40,189 bases of DNA from Vitrella brassicaformis CCMP3155 (lineage: Eukaryota; Protista; Chromerida), in NCBI GenBank assembly GCA_001179505.1, contig CDMY01000628.1, forward strand, positions 1 to 40,189, written 5' to 3'. Positions within the stretch are counted from its first letter, which is position 1, and every line of letters starts with the position of its first letter. Of the stretch, positions 16,201-38,633 are shown in pieces. The notes under the pieces were generated by a model. It was given only the letters and a program-made list of their open reading frames with translations, was not told the DNA's origin and did no database searches. Made by a program: the position numbers and the translations under genes.

Positions 16201-18725
16201 CATATACACACACACACACATACATGTGTAAGTGAGGTGTCTGCCTGAAGCTCCTTCCTGCTGCTCCGACCTGGCTGGGATTCGCTATGGGAGTGCCGCC
16301 AGGGTACACAGGCCACGATTGGCTCTTCAGGATGCTGAACTCCCACCAATCGTCAGTAGTGTTTAGCCGAGCAGCTATTAGTCGCTCCTTCTGCAAAGGA
16401 AACACAGCCATGCCCACTTGTATGTATGGCACAGACAGACGCAATCAAGGCTCGCCATGTACCAACCAGGTGAGCTGGGGCAATGAGGAAGGGATATGTG
16501 GTGTTCATTTCTTGTCTGTAGATCCCAGCAGGCTCCAGAGTCACAGTGGGAGGGACAGGATCGCTCGCAGCACTCGCTTCCCCCATCATATAGTTGGCAG
16601 GGATTGAGGCGAGGCCGGTCGGCAGCGCTGTGTAGGTCAGTATCTTGATGCCGGTATCGACATAAGTGCCTCCCCCAGCCACGCACACGCGGTAAGACGG
16701 ATTGACAAGCGCCCCTCCAGTGCTGATTGTCGCAGCAGCTGGAGTACCGGCGATTGCGTGGGGCCCCCCTCCGTTGCAGTCGGTGTCGTCTGTGATGCGG
16801 ACGGTGAGCGTGGGGGACCCCTGATAGGTACACGCCAGACTCACCGTGGCGCCCGATAGAATGAGCGTCGGGCTGACGGACGAAAGGCCAGCCACGTTGA
16901 GAGTGCCGGATAGGAGAGCCGCCTTGGATGCGGCAGGGGGCCACGCCGGGGTCGGTGAATTCACAGAAGCGGAAGCCACTGCCGGCCCACGGTAATGTGA
17001 ATGTCTGCTGAGATGAGGCGTCCAGGTTGACGTATGTCGTGACAGTCGAACATGGATCGGCAAGGGAAGTCGGCGCTGGCGGGACCATCGCTACGCGAGT
17101 GTTCTGAGGACAACGCGTAGCGGACAGACGGACATATCGGTGCAGTGTGTCTCGCTCGCCAAGTCCATGAACACATGTCGCTCACCTGCGAGAGGCCCGT
17201 GAACGTCACCGTGGACGCGTCAGCCTGATCAACCGTCCCTGTAGGTGAGGGTTGCTGACAAGACCGTTACAGTGTACCCGCTGTAATCCACAGCCGGGCC
17301 CCCCACCTGCGTCCTATAACACACCCCATACGTCCCAGTGCCGTTCATGGCCGACAGATCGATCGCCCCCGTCTGCAGGTTTGCGTCCAACAAATAATAG
17401 GTGACCCATGACAGGGAGCAGTCGGCAACCCCACTGTAGTCCTTGACGAAGGCCACTGCGTCGCCTTGCACGAGGGTGGCTCCGCCATATGCCTCAAATA
17501 TCTGTGTCTGCCCTTCGAGCACCTCCTTCGGATCGACGATGTTGGCGAGGCTGCGGACAGTGATAGTCAGGCCCGGCACTTGCACGTATTGGGGCGAATC
17601 AGGGTCTCGCTGACACACGCACGGCAGATGGTACTCAGCTTGCCCTGTGTGACGGTCGTCCCGTGTCTCCCGTCCGTCACCTTAATGCAGATGGCCTTCG
17701 TCGCCCCGCCAGCCGTGGTCAGTGTCACCTGGAATGTTGCCCATACATCCTGGCGCTTCAATGGGACAGCATTTCCCACCGTGCCCACTGCTGGACACCC
17801 TCCCCCATCGTCAATGTACACCACCAGGGTGTCATCAAGCCCCAGCCCCCCCAGAGTAATGACCCTTGTCACGCCATCCATCACAGCAGCCGGGCTGACG
17901 GCGGTCACGCCCGCAACGGTCAGAGAGAGGAAGTCCACTGGGTAGAAGGCGCCATCGGTCCCGCCTGTGGGTGCTGCGGGGCGGAAGCAGACTGAATAGC
18001 GGCCGACATTGGCGTTTGCTGCTGGAGTGATGGATATCGAGTAGGGTGCACCGGTGCCAATGTTGTGTGGGTCGCCGGGCAGAGCCCCGCCGCACACTGC
18101 GTTGCCAAATGGCGTGAAGCGGACGGCATCGGGGTTGGCGGAGGGCAGCCACGTCGGGTAAGCTGCAAAATGACCAAAATACGGCCACAGGAAACATTGG
18201 TGTGGTTTCTTCGGGGCGTCGCTCACTTGGCATGGTGAGTTCGATAGTGGTGGCGTGACCAGCCAGTATGACATCCCGGTTCATGGCTGTGGTCGGGTAG
18301 ACCACCCGCAGCTTCAGATCCTCCGTCGCCCAGCTGGTCGAGGCGTTGGTGCGATAACACAAGCCGCACTCGCCAATCTGCGTGAACTCAATGAAAGCGA
18401 CGAAGGCCGCGTCGAGTGTGGCTCGCTGGCCGGTCTCGCAGTTCGTGCTCGCAGCGACGACACCTGATCAGCAAGCAAAGGAGGACATGCTGATGTTTGT
18501 GCGCTTGTTTCTTCTCTCTCCCCTCTCCCACGCCCGCACACCTCCTGCATTTGGCCCGACGAACGACACAACGCCTCTGTCCTCCACTGTGTTGCTGAAG
18601 GTGAGGGGAACTGGGTAGGCAGAGCGTCGAAATGGATGGAGGACAGCCACACTCGGAGCCACGTCGACTGAAAACGTCGTCTGGCATAAGAAGAGGAGAA
18701 GGTAGAGTCTGACCAGCAACATCAT
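13228..18725 (-). CDS. Large secreted modular protein: signal peptide, six two-Cys Ig-like repeats, NHL-like propeller blades, PAN/Apple-like domain, six tenascin-type EGF repeats (two frame breaks near 17250 and 16950)
   Basis: Signal MMLLVRLYLLLFLCQTTFS; repeats with GxYxVC-like motifs; NHL-like HVFVADTENHRVV and LYVSDRANARIVEL; PAN-like ECKSACQHNPLCDCFSY..CVLK; EGF CGGRGEC..CVC..YTGGNC. About a dozen GT-AG introns with compatible phases; no C-terminal TM segment. Confidence 0.8.
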
Positions 18726-18988
18726 CTGCACAAAGGGTGGCTGCAGTGGCATCCTCTACGCCGTTGCAGCTGCGATCAACATGGCATGGAGGAAAGGCTG
18801 CAATCCCGATTAGCCCCTCCATTTTTGAGATCGTTACGCAGCCGTTGAACCGCGACCCTTCCGCAACTTTTGTCTGTCTTTCGTCACGATTCGACTCACG
18901 AATGTCTCATTCGTACACGCATCTAGCCCCTTGATTTAATTGCTCGCCCGACCCCCGGAACGAAACTATTCGTATGTAGGTCGCTATG

Positions 18989-21900
18989 TCACTCCTGCTC
19001 TATCTTTACGACGACAGGCACCTCGACAGGCATCACCAGACCACCATACTGCACCTCACAACCCAGATCTGGCATAGCCTGATCGGGGGATGCCTCACGA
19101 TGTGCGCTGCTAGCACCGCCAGCCATGCCGCCTCCGCCATGCCCATCCTCCCCCTCCCCGCCCTGGTTGGCCAGCATGGCATTGAAATCTAGCCCCGCCT
19201 CGGGGGCCTCTCTGTTGACGATCTCAACGCACTCGCGCAACGCTTCGAGCAGCCCCTCTCTTGTGAGGGTCTGCGGCACGACCGACCCTACATAACGGGG
19301 CTTGGCGTTCCCAATGGCCGATGATCGCTGGATTGAGTAGCGCCGGTTTTGTCTGGTCCAGTAGATGCGCGGGACGCCGCTGCTCATCTTTGGTGGCGAG
19401 GAGGCCGCGTAGAGCTGCTCTCTGAGGCTGTTGGCGAGCATGTCGACTAATGAGCGGTTGCCGTTGGAGGCTCTGGCCTCGGTCGGGCTGGGGGACCCTC
19501 GCTGGTGCTGCTGCTGCTGCTGCAGCTGCTGGTGATCCTGAGTGGCCGCTGCAGCCCCCTCCATTCCTTCTTGTGTGCCTCCGCTCTCGCTCTCATCTGC
19601 CTCCTCGTCAGGGTCCCACTTGCCAATATTGGCACTCATCACCCTGTCGAAGGCATCCATGCTTATCCGTTTGCTCTCGGGCATCTGGCCGTTTCTCGTC
19701 TGCACCGCTCGCCGCAGAGCAGCTATCAGGCCCTCCGTTGTGCGTGTGGGGAGCGGGAAAGTGGGCTCCTTGGCTGACGCCTCCTGATTGTGCTTGAGCG
19801 TGTAGCAGTCGGGCGTCCACACGATGCCAGGGGAGCACTTGTTCCTGTCGGGCGCCTTTGACAGGGGTGTGGTGCGCTTGAGGATCGTGTGAAGACGGCG
19901 GGCGACGGTAGAGAGATGGCTGCCCGCCAGATGCTGCTTCAGCTCGGGCAAGCGAACTGGGCACACAACACACACACCCAGACACAGCAGATGGACTGGG
20001 TGCCGGTCAGCTGGTGTGACTTACTCACTCACCGTCTTTGGGGTTCCTCCGGCGCTCAGCGGCCCTGAGAGTGTCGCGGTACTGGACCGCCCGCTGCAGC
20101 GCATCCTGCACGCCCTGTTCGTCTGCCGACTCGATGGCAAACGTCTTGAACGGCCCAGACTTGATTTGGACCTTGAAGGCGCCACGACCAAGAGTGATCT
20201 GCAGGCCACCAAACTCCATACTCTCGTCAGGATGTCGCATGCGGTCGGTCAACGCCTGCTCGGCCATGCGGGTGAGGGGCGAGGAGGAGGTCTCTCGTGA
20301 GGGTGAAGGGACGCTAGGGCGGGCCGATCGACGCGCGTCGACTGAGGCGTCCTCCCTGGCGACGCCGTGTTTTGCGCGCCGTTTCTTGGCGGGAGGTCCT
20401 TGCCTCACGAGCGGCGGTGGTGAGGGGAATGGGGGCGGCATGTCGGCATCACCTCCCTCGGAGGGCTCTTCCTTCTTGATGAATGCCGGCACTGCAAGTC
20501 CCTCCGTGGCACTGATGCCCTCCGCCAGGGCCTCGCCGCTGATCTGGGGGATGGTGGGGCCGCCCTCCATGGCCAAGTCCCTCGCCAGCTCGTTGCGCGC
20601 ATTGATGGCGTGCTGGCAGGCACACAGAGAGACCGAATGAAGGCAGGCACATAACATGCATCAGTGGAGCGAGCAGCCCGCGCACCTGGAGGGATGAGTG
20701 TATGGCTTTGATCGACAGCGTTGGTGGTCCGAATGTGCCGCCCGGCTGCCCCGCCAGCTGGACGCGGTAGTGCCCAGCAGGAGGGCCGGGGCGCCACGTG
20801 ATGCCGAGACGCTCATGCACCGAGGACGGGAGGGACTTGAGGAGGGCCTGCAGCAGGGCCTCGGCCTTGATCGTGCCGATCTGCGCGAAGTAGGCCCTCT
20901 GTTCATCACGGCCGCCCATATCGTCGTCCAGGTTATGCTCCTCCCTCTCTCTGTATGACGCGCGTGGCCTCCCCTTTTGACGCAGCGACTTGCTGACTCC
21001 GTGACCAAGAGGCATGGAGGACCTGCCCCTCTCCTGCTCATCGCCACCCGGCCCCCCCTCTCCCCCCGCCTCTCCCCCCGACTCATCTCGCTTCACTCGC
21101 ACTCGCGCCCTCACAGTGATGTCGCTGGCGCGCCTCTTGCGGCGGTTGGTGGGGGTCTTGAGCTGTGGGGTGGCCGCCTTCGGCTGCTGGACCGATGACG
21201 CCACATGCGGGGCCTTGCTGCCCAGCGCATCGTCGCCCACGGCGAGGCCGATGGCGGTCTGCATGCGTGTCAGGTCGATCCGTCCAGGCAAGCGCATCTC
21301 CTCCTGCAGAATGTTGCGGCAGTGGAGTGTCTCATGGAGGGCTGTGATGAGGCCGAGTGTGGTCGAGTCGGCAGGGCTGATGGTGTGGGCGTGGGTGGCC
21401 GTCGAGGAGCCGACCTTGAAGCGTCCCTCAGCGGTGTGCCATTGGATGCACTGGCCTCTCTTGGTCTTCATGCTGAGGGGGATGATCGTGAGGCACCGAT
21501 CGATGAGATCGTTGGCCAGATCCCCTTGCGCTATGGGGGACAGGGTGCGATCCAGTGGGGGCAGCGGACCTGATGATGAACACAACAGACAGCACACAGA
21601 CGGTGTTAAGGGACAGGCCCTCTCTTTCTTTCTCTCTGCGTGTCAGTTGCCTGACTCACTAGTGTGACTAGAAAATCGTGAAGGTGCGGGGAGGGGCCTT
21701 TGTTCTCGGATCTTGTCTCGATGCGCCACAGCGTTCGCGAAGGCCGCCTCCAGCGTTTCCCTCGTTATGGGACTCTCGACGAAGAAACGCATTTTGTCTG
21801 CTGCACCTGGCCCTTCTTGAACGAAGAAGTTGCACCGATTCATCTCGAAGCCCATCTGGAAGGCTCCATCTGCAATGTACTCGGTCGCCTTCTTGGCCAT

Positions 21901-23511
21901 CAGCAGCTCGGCGGCCACCGAACGGGCGTCGCGACGCAACAACTCTGCAGAAAGCACACAGAGACAGCTTTATAGTACACTTAGCGCTTTCTCCGTTTGC
22001 ACTCACCGTTTGTCTGCATGGGCGCCGCTCCCTGCTTCTTCGCGTCAGCCACCTTGGCCACCACGTGCTGCTCAATCTGCCGGATGTCCACCTGGTCGGT
22101 CATGAAGTCAATGGCCTTGTCAAGCGCCTCCAGTAGCCCACGCAATGTGTCGGACTGCGGCGAGAATGCCCGCGTGGTGAGGTCGACGGCGAGTGACGAC
22201 CTGGGCCTGACGACGAAGTGTGCGGTGCTTGTGTTCCAGAAGAAGCTGCCGCCCTGCTGGCTGCTAGGTGTCTGACGGGTCTTGACGAGCGACACCAGGT
22301 GGCTGGCATAAGTGTTGAGCCGGGACAGCACCAGCTCCTCGTCTAATGACGCGGGAAACACCACTGAACCCCCACAAACACAGCCAGCAACACAGACACA
22401 CACATCCAGGGCCAGCCATGGAGGGCGTCCATGTGTGAACTTTTCAGGCTTTTTGGCATACATGATTCGTCCACTTCCACGGCCGCTTTCGACGGTCGCC
22501 GCCCAGCGCCCCCGCCCCCTCCCTCGGCCAATGCGGGCGGCACCAAACCTTCCGGCACATGAGGGAGGATATCTCTGACATGTGTGATGTCTATCTGGGC
22601 ATCCGTGTATCCCGCATCAGCAGCCAGACGATTGCGGGCCTCCAGCGCCTCCAGGAAGGCCGTGACGCAGCCAGCGACGCTCCTCTGCCGGACGGGAATG
22701 TTCCGCTCCTCGCCTGAGGGCAGCCTGGCCTTGAAGCCGCCGTAGGAGCCGCATTGTGACAACCATGACACGTGCAGGCCGACCTTGTTCTTGCCGAAGT
22801 TGATGCCTCGTACAGCGGGGATGGGGTCGAACGGGGGGGCAGAGAGTGCCTTGTCGACGGGAGGGAAGTCCGCGGGGTCGACGCCCTTGTCTCGCTTGGA
22901 CGTGACGGCCTCACGGTGCCTGAGGGCCTCGCGGAACGCCTCAGACACCCCGCGCTCGGTGTGCTCAGCAGGGGTGAAGAGGGTGATACCATCCTTGCCG
23001 TTGTTGAATGAGAACCGCCTGCATCCGAGAGAAAGAGAGAGAGAGAGAGACAGAGGGGCAGACAGACAAGCCCCATCCACCAGTGTCTGTGCCAGCAGCA
23101 TGGATATCTATGATAGATGGGTGGATGGCTCACCGCCGCTGAGGACACCATGCGATATACACTCCCCCGTCGCTGAGACTCATTGACGCTCTCTTGGCAT
23201 CGATCAGACGCTGCGCCAACTGCGTCTCATCGATGGCACTCAAAGAGGCGCTCACACGGCCATTGGCCGATGCAGCGGCAGCAGCAGCATCGCAGTCGTC
23301 TGTGAATGGCGGTGTGTGGTGCCCCTCGAGGTATGTCTGCGCCATCCCCATCCCGCCCAGCCGCTGGGCCATGGTGAGACCCTCTTCCTGATCCTCATCA
23401 TCCATGTCATCTGCAGCAAAAGGATTCGTTCACACATACGTACACACGGATAGATGGCTGGCTGGCTGGTAACAGCAGCCCCCTCAGTGCACTCGCGTCA
23501 CCTTGGTGCAT
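18989..23511 (-). CDS. Large nuclear-type protein with nine divergent AP2-like modules (start uncertain, may extend to about 23750)
   Basis: Six internal introns give phase-compatible junctions (..CPQR/RRFSF.., ..DES/LVFPAS.., ..QTN/ELLRR.., ..SHT/SPLPP.., ..SSLQ/HAINAR.., ..PKD/VRLPE..) ending VKIEQE*. Nine repeats of about 55 aa share G-hydrophobic-xW..f.v...f..t..gl.eAl..A...Rn. Basic NLS-like (PPAKKRRAKH, RRKRR) and SUMO-consensus (IKAE, IKKE, VKIE) motifs sit in the linkers. Confidence 0.75.
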
Positions 23512-24260
23512 GGCCCTATCTACGGCTACATCCTGACATACATCCTGACAGCAACAACGGACGCACGCAGAGAGAATTCGGATTCCACCACACCCACACT
23601 CGTGCATCTATTCTGGCATCACTCCCTCACCATTGCATCGAGCCTCTCGCCATTGTTGAGTCCACGTGAGTCGCCTTGCGCCGCCTCGCTGTGGTCTGGC
23701 AGGGGAATCGCCGCCGCAGCAGCAGCGGCAGCGGCATGCGACCCTGAACCGTAGCCATTCGTACCTCAATTTGTTAAATCATACAAGCGTGTGGGAACAA
23801 CACAACAGAAATGAGCAGTCGCCGGGGAACATCGCATATATATTGAATCAAGCTTACTCTCGGGGTGCTGCATAATCAAGCGATTTCTGCGATTCAAGTC
23901 AAGACGTCATGCGCGTCGTGCCGCTCGCCGCGGTCCGGTCAGGGCATGGCTGCAAATACGGGTTTGACACTCCATCTGTGACGTTCCTGGTGCCACTGTG
24001 CCTGCTCACCTCGGGACCATCGGAGCGCAGAACACGCAGTGCGTCGAGTTTCTTCGTACCCTTCCTCTATTCGACGGCTGCACACTCATCATTACCTTCT
24101 GACACAGCTGTGCCTAGGGCACACGTGAAACCGTCGCGAGATGGAGCTCGCACTTGAAGACGCTCTCTTTGGGACGTCCACGTCTCTTTGGTGACCCGTT
24201 AGCTTGTGTTTGTGACCCCGTTGGCTTGTGTGCAGCCAGTCGCAGTGACTGTCCAGTCAG

Positions 24261-25295
24261 ATGAAGTCTGAGGAGGTCTGCACGGCGCCTTCGCCCACAG
24301 ATGGTCCCACGGAGTTCTACTGGTCCAACGAGCACGAGCCGCACGCCAGACGACGGAGAGAAATCGTCGCCAGGCATCCTGAGGTTCTCGGCCTCTACGG
24401 ACCCGACAGTCGCGAGGCGGTATTCGCGTCGGCATGCATCCTCATCCAGTTCGCCGTCGGGGCGGTCATCGGCTTCTATGCTCAGCAACTCAGCTGGGGA
24501 GCGGTGTTGGTGCTGACCTACTGCGTGAGCGGGACGATCAACCACTCTCTCTTCCTGGCGATGCACGAGTGCGCCCATTCGTCGTTCTTCACGTCCAAGT
24601 GGCAGAATGAGTGGTTCGCTGTTCTGGTCAACCTGCCGACGGGCATCCCCGCGGCCATCACCTTCAAGCGGTACCACATGGAGCACCACGCGCACCAGGG
24701 CGTCGACGGCGTCGACATGGACATCCCCACCCACGCAGAGGGGTGGTTCTTCCGCACACCGGCGCGCAAGCTGCTGTGGGTCGTCCTCATGCCCTTCATG
24801 TACGCCTTCCGGCCGCTGCTCATGAAGCCCAAGCCGATGTCCTTGATGGAGGCCATGAACTGGCTCTGTGTGGCCGCCAGCGATGTCGCCGTCCTCTACT
24901 GGCTCGGCCCCAAGACGCTCTTCTACTTTGTGGGCGGGACCTTTCTGGGGACGGGGCTTCACCCGCTGTCGGGTCACTTCATTGCGGAGCATTTCGTCTT
25001 CATTGAGGGGCAGGAGACCTACTCCTACTACGGCCCGCTCAACTGGCTGACCTACAACGTGGGCTATCACAATGAGCACCACGACTTCCCCCGCATCCCC
25101 GGCAGCCGACTGCCCGCCCTCAAGAAGATGGCCCCCGATTACTACGACAACCTGCCGGCCTACAGCAGCTGGTCACAGGTGCTCTGGGACTTTGTCTTCG
25201 AGTACGACGTCAACTGCTTCAGCCGCATCAAGCGACGGCGGCAGGTGCCCAACGCACAGGCGGGCATTAGCGACGAGGGCAAGAAGGGCAATTGA
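24261..25295 (+). CDS. DES1: Sphingolipid delta(4)-desaturase (dihydroceramide desaturase), intronless
   Basis: Single 344-aa ORF with the N-terminal FYWSNEHEPHARRRREIVARHPEV lipid-desaturase motif, three His boxes (HECAH, HMEHH, HNEHHDFP), GHFIAEH and QETYSYYGPLNWLTYNVGY. Confidence 0.95.
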   Translation: MKSEEVCTAPSPTDGPTEFYWSNEHEPHARRRREIVARHPEVLGLYGPDSREAVFASACILIQFAVGAVIGFYAQQLSWGAVLVLTYCVSGTINHSLFLAMHECAHSSFFTSKWQNEWFAVLVNLPTGIPAAITFKRYHMEHHAHQGVDGVDMDIPTHAEGWFFRTPARKLLWVVLMPFMYAFRPLLMKPKPMSLMEAMNWLCVAASDVAVLYWLGPKTLFYFVGGTFLGTGLHPLSGHFIAEHFVFIEGQETYSYYGPLNWLTYNVGYHNEHHDFPRIPGSRLPALKKMAPDYYDNLPAYSSWSQVLWDFVFEYDVNCFSRIKRRRQVPNAQAGISDEGKKGN

Positions 25296-38333: not shown

Positions 38334-38633
38334 NNNNNNNNNNNNNNNNNNNNNNNNNNNNNNNNNNNNNNNNNNNNNNNNNNNNNNNNNNNNNNNNNNN
38401 NNNNNNNNNNNNNNNNNNNNNNNNNNNNNNNNNNNNNNNNNNNNNNNNNNNNNNNNNNNNNNNNNNNNNNNNNNNNNNNNNNNNNNNNNNNNNNNNNNNN
38501 NNNNNNNNNNNNNNNNNNNNNNNNNNNNNNNNNNNNNNNNNNNNNNNNNNNNNNNNNNNNNNNNNNNNNNNNNNNNNNNNNNNNNNNNNNNNNNNNNNNN
38601 NNNNNNNNNNNNNNNNNNNNNNNNNNNNNNNNN
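38334..38633. other. Assembly gap (300 N)
   Basis: Run of N. Confidence 1.

What the first reader, a model, noticed from the sequence alone, without database searches (positions are those of the whole stretch)
18989..23511. One gene encoding nine tandem, highly divergent AP2-like DNA-binding modules
Seen: nine ~55-aa units, each with a G-rich aromatic first strand, two further strands and an amphipathic helix ending A..xR(N/D): (1) GGVYIAWCPQR/RRFSF..GVSEAFREALRHRE; (2) GLHVSWLSQ..GGFKARL..GCVTAFLEALEARN; (3) GGSFFWNTSTAHFVV..GLLEALDKAIDF; (4) GAFQMGFEMNRCNFFV..TLEAAFANAVAHRD; (5) GQCIQWHTAEGRFKV..GLITALHETLHCRN; (6) LGITWRPGPPAGHYRV..AIHSSLQ/HAINARN; (7) GGLQITLGRGAFKV..GVQDALQRAVQYRD; (8) PGIVWTPDCYTL..GLIAALRRAVQTRN; (9) PRIYWTRQNRRYSI..GLLEALRECVEIVN. 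Linkers carry NLS-like and SUMO-consensus motifs. Established: the ApiAP2 fold is three strands plus a helix (GVxW/F..W.a..F...A..A...R), and typical ApiAP2 proteins carry only a few such domains. Inference: a poly-AP2-like factor or a new AP2-derived repeat family that lacks the canonical F..kyG signature and could escape Pfam annotation. This is the best candidate here for an undescribed system.
Basis: partly seen in the sequence, partly recalled or inferred. Interest (0 to 1): 0.82.

Follow-up and report, generated by a model that had tools for sequence, protein, structure and literature searches.

The report
Nine hidden AP2-type modules, one gene
One expressed gene of the alga Vitrella brassicaformis, a free-living relative of malaria parasites, encodes nine very divergent copies of the AP2 DNA-binding fold that standard domain databases miss, so AP2 regulators in this group are probably undercounted.

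Summary
All nine motif sets are present on the minus strand. A profile built only from paralogous genes finds exactly nine modules in the protein.

One transcriptome contig spans every module with the introns removed, so this is a single gene. It encodes 1300 aa from the ATG at 23405, or 1366 aa from the annotated start at 23873.

The AP2 reading is largely supported:
- Pfam gives no hit at all.
- A 40-sequence profile of the module aligns to canonical AP2 domains of the same genome at 93% probability (E 3.5e-7). Decoys reach at most 1.7%.
- Two modules fold confidently (pLDDT 89.7) as three strands plus a helix.

Eight of the nine modules also carry an N-terminal helix. The sub-family has at least 77 copies in Vitrella and only 85 representative proteins worldwide. 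Those looked up come from Vitrella, dinoflagellates, Perkinsus and Cryptosporidium.

DNA binding is inferred, not shown, and several modules have lost the positive sheet charge. The public gene model fuses this gene with its downstream neighbour, which the RNA contigs do not support.

Other readers of this scan noted AP2-shaped repeats in two other genes of this genome.

The parts
18989..23873 (-). Whole coding region. There are ten exons if the annotated start at 23873 is used (1366 aa). There are seven coding exons from the ATG at 23405 (1300 aa). The stop codon is at 18991-18989.
   Evidence: Splice sites and phases come from the sequence. Public protein P0086 residues 1-1356 map to 23762..19022.
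23134..23410 (-). Exon holding the ATG at 23405 and the N-terminal helix and first strand of module 1. The three 5' exons of the annotated start lie at 23873-23858, 23764-23631 and 23544-23502.
   Evidence: RNA shows a joint at 23411-23501. A loose end at 23545 continues with the letters that precede 23631. The public model is compared.
22898..23228 (-). Module 1. The helix and strand 1 lie in 23228-23136, and the rest in 23017-22898. Intron 1 (23133-23019, 115 nt) splits it just after strand 1.
   Evidence: It is an intact domain in the spliced protein at P0086:132-195, E 1e-11 with the paralog-only HMM. Contig record 20 joins 23017 to 23133.
22616..22816 (-). Module 2. It is the only module without the N-terminal helix.
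   Evidence: P0086:234-289, E 7e-9.
22364..22461 (-). Intron 2 (98 nt, phase 1). The acceptor is at 22364/22363, not at 22343 as I first modelled from the sequence.
   Evidence: RNA joint skipping 98 nt. The public protein carries the seven extra residues.
22092..22340 (-). Module 3, with its helix. It lies wholly inside exon 22363-22007, an exon flanked by phase-1 introns on both sides.
   Evidence: P0086:368-428, E 1e-9.
21703..21927 (-). Module 4, with its helix. It lies wholly inside exon 21944-21660, also flanked by phase-1 introns on both sides. Its sheet has net charge -1.
   Evidence: P0086:497-541, E 1e-6.
21301..21531 (-). Module 5, with its helix.
   Evidence: P0086:590-644, E 2e-12.
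20583..20871 (-). Module 6. Intron 5 (20685-20613, 73 nt, phase 0) splits it inside the C-terminal helix.
   Evidence: RNA joint. It is an intact domain at P0086:799-861, E 2e-10.
20061..20273 (-). Module 7, with its helix. The 54-aa core (20061-20222) was folded.
19679..19912 (-). Module 8, with its helix.
   Evidence: P0086:1084-1134, E 9e-11.
19202..19453 (-). Module 9, with its helix. It is the most basic module (sheet net charge +7). All 84 aa were folded.
   Evidence: AlphaFold2 gives pLDDT 89.7 and pTM 0.79, with helix 2-17, three strands and helix 65-82.
20686..21300 (-). Long linker between modules 5 and 6. It holds the NLS-like RRKRR (P0086 residue 699). A second run, KKRR (residue 927), lies in the linker between modules 6 and 7 inside exon 20612-20033.

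Best explanation
This is one expressed nuclear gene of Vitrella brassicaformis. Its product of 1300-1366 aa is a string of nine independently folding AP2-superfamily modules.

Each module is a three-stranded sheet packed on a C-terminal helix. Eight of the nine are preceded by an extra N-terminal helix. The modules are joined by linkers of 40-165 aa that carry two NLS-like basic runs.

The modules belong to a divergent AP2 sub-family. It is expanded in Vitrella, is seen so far only in myzozoan alveolates, and falls below Pfam's AP2 model.

Most likely mechanism (inferred): the protein enters the nucleus and binds DNA or chromatin multivalently. The more basic modules (1, 2, 6, 7, 9) would each insert their sheet into the major groove, as canonical AP2 domains do, so that the chain reads long composite or repeated sites. 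The neutral modules (3-5) may serve as spacers or protein-contact surfaces.

Shown here: the gene structure, the single transcript, the number of modules, the fold, the homology to AP2, and the family's size and range. Inferred: nuclear location, DNA binding and multivalency.

My confidence that the modules are AP2 homologues is about 0.85. My confidence that the protein acts as a DNA or chromatin-binding factor is about 0.45.
For: Gene and transcript:
- Every intron is GT..AG and the phases are consistent.
- One 4319-nt contig of run X6 covers 18945-23545 and beyond, with all introns removed. Runs X1 and X2 repeat three of the joints each, four between them.

Module count:
- The paralog-only HMM finds exactly nine modules.

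Homology to AP2:
- hhalign of 40 modules against 19 canonical AP2 domains of the same genome gives 93% probability, E 3.5e-7 and 51 columns. Decoys score at most 13.2 against 34.0.
- The module profile, searched against 1.84 billion representatives, recovers proteins whose matched residues coincide with canonical AP2 HMM hits, for example P0016, P0043 and P0063.
- About ten of 69 module hits elsewhere in the genome lie within 1.5 kb of a canonical AP2 hit, by my own hand tally. Roughly 0.46 are expected by chance, giving Poisson P 8e-11.
- One Cryptosporidium relative is named an AP2/ERF protein by UniRef.

Fold:
- Two AlphaFold2 models reach pLDDT 89.7.
- ESM Atlas neighbours include Arm-DNA-bind_4/5 domains of integrases and of a GIY-YIG nuclease.

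Nuclear or chromatin context:
- NLS-like runs are present.
- Paralogs combine the module with a PHD finger (30.8 bits, above the cut-off), a sub-threshold chromo domain, or a canonical AP2 pair.
Against: - Pfam AP2 does not match at all.
- Foldseek and sequence searches of the PDB give nothing significant.
- Only two of the nine modules were folded.
- Net charge of the sheet is -1 to +3 in eight modules, against +2 to +8 in canonical AP2 domains of the same genome. Several modules may therefore not bind nucleic acid.
- I could not see where the N-terminal helix packs. If it covers the DNA-binding face it would block binding.
- Published work shows that AP2-fold proteins can serve as ribosomal scaffolds (PMC11742926), and that some predicted AP2 domains show no DNA binding (PMC4117751).
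Confidence: 0.7

Rival explanations
1. The modules are true AP2 descendants that no longer read DNA. The protein would be a scaffold or RNA-binding factor in which the AP2 fold is only a structural bead, as in the AP2-like proteins built into the Toxoplasma and Perkinsus mitoribosomes.
For: - Sheet charge is low or neutral in most modules.
- Structural neighbours 2 and 3 are Toxoplasma mitoribosome large-subunit chains, with 25% identity over 44 residues.
- The mitoribosomal AP2-like proteins contact rRNA through extensions rather than the canonical face (PMC11742926).
- Some predicted apicomplexan AP2 domains show no DNA binding (PMC4117751).
Against: - The N-terminus is acidic from either start codon and does not look like a mitochondrial presequence.
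- NLS-like runs are present.
- Per PMC11742926, one of the mitoribosomal AP2-like proteins carries a tandem AP2 domain and no larger array is described, whereas this protein has nine modules.
- Paralogs pair the module with PHD, chromo-like and canonical AP2 domains, which points to chromatin.
Confidence: 0.2
2. The modules are not AP2 homologues. They would be an unrelated, lineage-specific helix-sheet-helix repeat that resembles AP2 only by convergence.
For: - No Pfam or PDB sequence match.
- Foldseek finds nothing.
Against: - Profile-profile probability is 93% in the correct register, with clean decoy controls.
- The module profile retrieves canonical AP2 domains at the same residues.
- One domain (L019:1468-1623) is hit by both HMMs.
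- Module hits are strongly co-located with canonical AP2 domains in the same genes.
- The core model ranks AP2 structures 1 to 3.
Confidence: 0.07
3. The array is a remnant of a mobile element, since AP2 or arm-type DNA-binding domains commonly accompany integrases and homing endonucleases.
For: ESM Atlas shape neighbours include integrases and a GIY-YIG nuclease carrying Arm-DNA-bind domains. Bacterial and phage AP2 domains are usually tied to such enzymes (PMC4117751).
Against: - No nuclease, integrase or transposase family is found in the 1793-aa public protein at E<=1.
- The gene has spliceosomal introns and is expressed as one mRNA.
- The paralogs are ordinary multi-exon genes spread over many contigs.
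Confidence: 0.03

Closest known systems
ApiAP2 / AP2-ERF DNA-binding domain (Pfam PF00847), for example the PfSIP2 tandem AP2 (PDB 6sy0)
   Same: - Length of the core, about 50-55 aa.
- Three antiparallel strands followed by one helix.
- Aromatic residue at the end of strand 1, and a helix ending in A..A..R(N/D).
- Significant profile-profile match.
- Best structural neighbour.
- Occurrence in myzozoan alveolates, sometimes in the same proteins as canonical AP2.
   Different: - It scores nothing against the Pfam model.
- It lacks the FS(V)..(L)G(Y)E signature of the Vitrella canonical domains.
- Eight of the nine copies carry an N-terminal helix.
- The sheet is much less basic.
- There are nine copies in one protein. 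A paralog has ten plus two canonical domains. Multidomain Cryptosporidium parvum ApiAP2 proteins are numbered D1-D4 (PMC4117751).
AP2-like proteins of the Toxoplasma and Perkinsus mitoribosome (mL143, mL153, mL161, mS130)
   Same: Divergent AP2 fold in a myzozoan. Two Toxoplasma large-subunit chains (9i05_XH, 9g6k_LG) are structural neighbours 2 and 3, with rmsd 1.6 A and 25% identity over 44 residues. I did not confirm which named proteins these chains are.
   Different: - PMC11742926 describes these as proteins with an ApiAP2-like domain, one of them tandem, plus long extensions that contact rRNA.
- The window protein has nine modules, an acidic N-terminus and NLS-like runs.
- No orthology was shown.
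Arm-type and N-terminal DNA-binding domains of tyrosine recombinases (Pfam Arm-DNA-bind_4/5), in the same superfamily as AP2
   Same: Three-stranded sheet plus helix. They appear among the ESM Atlas shape neighbours, with TM 0.47-0.54 by query.
   Different: They are always attached to a recombinase or nuclease catalytic domain and present as a single copy. No such enzyme domain is present here.
Poly-zinc-finger proteins (analogy of architecture only)
   Same: Many small nucleic-acid-binding modules on one chain, joined by linkers. In zinc-finger proteins this allows recognition of long composite sites.
   Different: The fold is unrelated and there is no metal site. The linkers here are long (40-165 aa) and variable rather than short and conserved.

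Membership tests
AP2/ERF - ApiAP2 domain (PF00847) | Match to the family's sequence model above the curated cut-off (33.3 bits) | tested here: not met
   There is no AP2 hit at E<=10 in any exon and none at E<=1 in the whole public protein. No hit on this contig is among the 150 scored AP2 matches of the genome.
AP2/ERF - ApiAP2 domain (PF00847) | Remote homology to canonical AP2 domains by profile-profile comparison | tested here: met
   hhalign of A3 against A2 gives probability 93%, E 3.5e-7 and 51 of 53 columns. The reversed decoy and 40 column-shuffled decoys reach at most 1.7% probability and a score of 13.2, against 34.0.
AP2/ERF - ApiAP2 domain (PF00847) | Fold: three-stranded antiparallel sheet packed against one C-terminal helix, about 60 aa | tested here: met
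   The AlphaFold2 models of module 9 (strands 28-33, 38-43, 53-58 and helix 65-82) and of the module 7 core (strands 7-11, 15-20, 25-29 and helix 35-53) both reach pLDDT 89.7. The other seven modules are inferred from alignment only.
AP2/ERF - ApiAP2 domain (PF00847) | Closest solved structures are AP2 domains | tested here: met
AP2/ERF - ApiAP2 domain (PF00847) | Basic and aromatic residues on the sheet face that contacts the major groove | tested here: inconclusive
   An aromatic residue ends strand 1 in eight of nine modules. Sheet net charge is -1 to +3 (module 9: +7), against +2 to +8 in 20 canonical domains of the same genome. Individual contact positions were not mapped.
AP2/ERF - ApiAP2 domain (PF00847) | Sequence-specific binding to double-stranded DNA | not testable with these tools
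   This needs a protein-binding microarray, SELEX, DAP-seq or EMSA.
Mitoribosomal AP2-like proteins of Myzozoa | Mitochondrial targeting and an architecture of one or two AP2-like domains with rRNA-binding extensions | tested here: not met
   The protein has nine modules, an acidic N-terminus from either start codon, and two NLS-like runs. The architecture of the mitoribosomal proteins is taken from PMC11742926. No targeting predictor was run.
Integrase or homing-endonuclease-associated AP2 / arm-type domains | Fusion to a recombinase, HNH or GIY-YIG catalytic domain | tested here: not met
   No Pfam family of any kind is found in P0086 at E<=1.

The most novel reading that the evidence does not exclude
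The helix-capped module may be a functionally distinct AP2-derived domain family of myzozoans, not merely a set of degenerate AP2 copies. Arrays of 9-12 modules would then form a 'poly-AP2' class of proteins that reads long composite or repeated DNA (or RNA) elements module by module. That would be an alveolate counterpart of poly-zinc-finger proteins. It would also mean that ApiAP2 repertoires in chromerids, dinoflagellates, Perkinsus and Cryptosporidium are substantially undercounted.
Probability: 0.25. Interest if true: 0.7.

Novelty: new variant of a known kind. Interest (0 to 1): 0.45.

Why it matters
AP2 proteins are the main known specific transcription factors of apicomplexan parasites and their algal relatives. 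Their census rests on Pfam-type models (PMC4501334, PMC4117751).

This work shows a sub-family those models miss completely. It has at least 77 copies in Vitrella, and relatives in dinoflagellates, Perkinsus and Cryptosporidium. It can be strung into arrays of nine or more modules, whereas multidomain Cryptosporidium parvum ApiAP2 proteins are numbered only D1-D4 (PMC4117751).

A dedicated profile would change the counts of DNA-binding proteins in these genomes. It would also give candidates for regulators of Cryptosporidium genes that are now listed as hypothetical proteins.

The reduced charge of many modules also bears on a current question: how often the AP2 fold has been put to uses other than DNA binding.

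Tried and rejected
- **Pfam.** A scan of each exon and of the whole public protein gave nothing relevant.
- **HMM searches of PDB sequences.** I tried three module profiles. There were no significant hits. The Plasmodium AP2 entry 3igm appeared only at E 1.4.
- **Foldseek against the PDB.** Both models gave nothing at E<=0.001.
- **The 84-aa model with its N-terminal helix in the wide VIA search.** It gave only generic alpha/beta matches, with AP2 at rank 15. I therefore folded a core-only module, which ranked AP2 first.
- **Word-based protein search with exon 7.** It returned only a fragment of the same gene from a transcriptome set.
- **ESM Atlas search by features.** No usable hit.
- **My first gene model.** It placed the acceptor of intron 2 at 22343. 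RNA shows 22364/22363, so I corrected it.
- **The low-GC block at 38-39 kb.** I checked it as a possible feature. It is an assembly gap of N.
- **Spliced model.** I built no joined model of my own for any search. Exons were searched one by one by reference. Whole-protein work used the public record P0086, whose residues 1-1356 cover this gene.
- **Mitoribosomal protein and mobile-element remnant.** Both were considered and rejected (see rivals).
Full report
**Source and locus**

The window is contig C628 of a 72.7-Mb, 1064-contig assembly. Exact look-up of the encoded protein identifies it as Vitrella brassicaformis CCMP3155. The product is CEM27122.1 / A0A0G4GD51, listed as 'uncharacterized protein'.

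**Observation**

The frames join through GT..AG introns with consistent phases.

I laid the contigs of four public runs on 18900-23600.
- Run X6 holds one 4319-nt contig that covers 18945 to 23545 and beyond.
- That contig has these introns removed: 19957-20032, 20613-20685, 21570-21659, 21945-22006, 22364-22461, 23019-23133 and 23411-23501.
- Runs X1 and X2 repeat three of these joints each, four between them.
- Run X4 is unspliced genomic DNA.

The RNA corrected one of my predicted acceptors: 22364/22363 rather than 22343, which adds seven residues.

The coding region gives 1300 aa from the ATG at 23405. It gives 1366 aa from the annotated start at 23873, through small exons at 23873-23858, 23764-23631 and 23544-23502. 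The RNA joints agree with the last two of those exons.

Exons were searched one at a time by reference. Whole-protein work used the public record P0086.

**Annotation problem**

P0086 is 1793 aa because the public model splices from 19022 to 18755. That removes the stop codon at 18991-18989 and fuses the gene to the downstream repeat gene at 18755-17232. Three RNA contigs run unspliced through 19022, and no joint is seen there. The fusion is therefore unsupported. Residues 1-1356 of P0086 are this gene.

**Is the repeat real?**

MAFFT aligns the units in one register. A profile of them finds many other places in the genome. I fetched 18 of these loci and extracted their modules.

An HMM made only from 33 paralogous modules, with no window sequence in it, finds exactly nine domains in P0086. 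They score 15-33 bits, with E of 1e-6 to 2e-12 for one protein.

Modules 1 and 6 are each split by an intron in the DNA. In the spliced protein they are recovered as intact domains, which also supports the splicing.

Eight of the nine hits start at profile positions 1-6, in an N-terminal helix. Module 2 lacks that helix.

Four of the six introns between 23134 and 19956 lie in linkers, and all four are phase 1. Modules 3 and 4 are each encoded by one exon flanked by phase-1 introns. This is what duplication of unit exons would leave behind; that reading is my inference.

**Relation to AP2**

Pfam's AP2 model has at least 150 matches in this genome, and none is listed on this contig. It does not match any exon at E<=10 or P0086 at E<=1.

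The evidence that the modules are nevertheless AP2 homologues is as follows.
- I aligned 19 canonical AP2 domains of the same genome. Against the nine units alone, hhalign gave 47.6% probability.
- Against 40 modules it gave 93%, E 3.5e-7, over 51 of 53 AP2 columns, with strands and helix in register.
- A reversed decoy and 40 column-shuffled decoys reached at most 1.7% probability and a score of 13.2, against 34.0.
- The same module profile, run against 1.84 billion representative proteins, returned only 85 at E<=0.001.
- In many of these 85 the matched residues coincide with hits of my canonical AP2 HMM. In P0043 and P0063 the AP2 E-values are 1e-16 to 1e-21.
- One Vitrella domain (L019:1468-1623) is hit by both HMMs.
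- Within the genome, about ten of 69 module hits outside this gene lie within 1.5 kb of a canonical AP2 hit. This is my own hand tally. About 0.46 are expected by chance, giving Poisson P 8e-11.
- Those hits do not overlap the canonical ones. The module is a third, distinct domain that lies beside a canonical AP2 pair in those genes.

**Fold**

- AlphaFold2, with the 40-sequence alignment, modelled module 9 (84 aa) at pLDDT 89.7 and pTM 0.79 as helix, three strands, helix.
- It modelled the module 7 core (54 aa) at pLDDT 89.7 as three strands plus a helix.
- Foldseek found nothing for either model.
- The exhaustive VIA-align search with the 84-aa model gave only generic matches, with PfSIP2 AP2 at rank 15.
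- That mitoribosome is reported to contain four AP2-like proteins (PMC11742926). I assume, but did not confirm, that these two chains are among them.
- ESM Atlas shape neighbours include Arm-DNA-bind domains of integrases and of a GIY-YIG nuclease, which are relatives of AP2.

**Family size and range**

The core profile has 77 matches at E<=0.001 in Vitrella, on more than 30 contigs. They include genes with five to seven modules on contigs C465, C653, C649 and C461. One 2622-aa protein, P0003, has ten modules plus a canonical AP2 pair.

I looked up 30 of the 85 representatives. They come from Vitrella, the dinoflagellates Prorocentrum and Polarella, Perkinsus olseni, five Cryptosporidium species (hypothetical proteins of 878-913 aa) and unnamed metagenome contigs. 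No Chromera protein was among those looked up. One Cryptosporidium member is named an AP2/ERF protein by UniRef, although Pfam finds nothing in it.

**Function**

- Two linkers carry RRKRR and KKRR.
- The N-terminus is acidic from either start codon.
- Paralogs combine the module with a PHD finger (30.8 bits), a sub-threshold chromo domain, or canonical AP2 domains.

These points favour a nuclear, chromatin-linked role.

Against simple DNA binding, the sheet of eight modules has net charge -1 to +3, compared with +2 to +8 in canonical domains of the genome. Only module 9 reaches +7. Published work shows that AP2-fold proteins can act as ribosomal scaffolds (PMC11742926) and that some predicted AP2 domains bind no DNA in vitro (PMC4117751).

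My best reading is a multivalent DNA or chromatin-binding protein in which some modules have become spacers or protein-contact surfaces. This is inference.

**Novelty**

AP2 expansion by duplication in chromerids is published (PMC4501334). Multidomain Cryptosporidium parvum ApiAP2 proteins are numbered D1-D4 (PMC4117751).

My two paper searches returned 15 papers, and in the four I opened I found no description of three things:
- a helix-capped sub-family invisible to Pfam;
- its arrays of nine to twelve modules;
- its presence in unannotated Cryptosporidium, Perkinsus and dinoflagellate proteins.

I class this as a new variant of a known kind, of moderate interest.

Other readers of this scan noted AP2-shaped repeats in two other genes of the same genome. 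I did not examine those loci.

Noticed in passing
window 17232-19022 (minus strand): The public gene model CEM27122.1 (1793 aa) splices 19022 to 18755. This removes the stop codon at 18991-18989 and fuses the AP2-like gene to the downstream repeat gene at 18755-17232. RNA contigs of three runs run unspliced through 19022 and end near 18945-18875, so these are probably two genes. The downstream part (P0086:1357-1793) has no Pfam family at E<=0.01.
   Followed up: partly
window 24261-25295 (plus strand): An intron-free 344-aa ORF matches Fatty acid desaturase (109 bits) and the Sphingolipid Delta4-desaturase N-terminal domain (53 bits). It is a dihydroceramide desaturase-type gene, divergently oriented next to the AP2-like gene.
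   Followed up: partly
window 38335-38633: The drop to 40% GC in the composition profile is an assembly gap (a run of N), not a sequence feature. CA and CT dinucleotide repeats lie just downstream of it.
   Followed up: yes
G000 contigs C850 (L025), C269 (L026), C348, C313, C668, C488: A recurring three-domain arrangement spaced about 300 nt apart: one helix-capped divergent module, then an AP2 that matches only positions 1-41 of the model, then a full canonical AP2. Many such genes sit in clusters on C290 and C269.
   Followed up: partly
G000 contigs C465:62.3-65.0 kb, C653:8.0-11.0 kb, C649:3.1-5.9 kb, C461:1.9-6.4 kb: Four closely related paralogs each carry five to seven modules. Their C-terminal helix is nearly invariant (TREAIDKALEEAV..RN.LA). 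This looks like a recent gene-family expansion, distinct from the old, highly diverged modules of the window gene.
   Followed up: partly
window 23631-23756 (minus strand), 5' region of the gene: A short ORF of about 42 codons in another frame (beginning MATVQGRMPLPLLL) overlaps the annotated 5' coding exon. It may be a chance ORF or an upstream ORF.
   Followed up: no
Read laying loose ends at window 21397, 23292 and 19963-19977: Contigs of several runs leave the locus at the same few points and continue into unrelated sequence. This suggests short sequences shared with other loci, or assembly chimeras, rather than alternative splicing.
   Followed up: no
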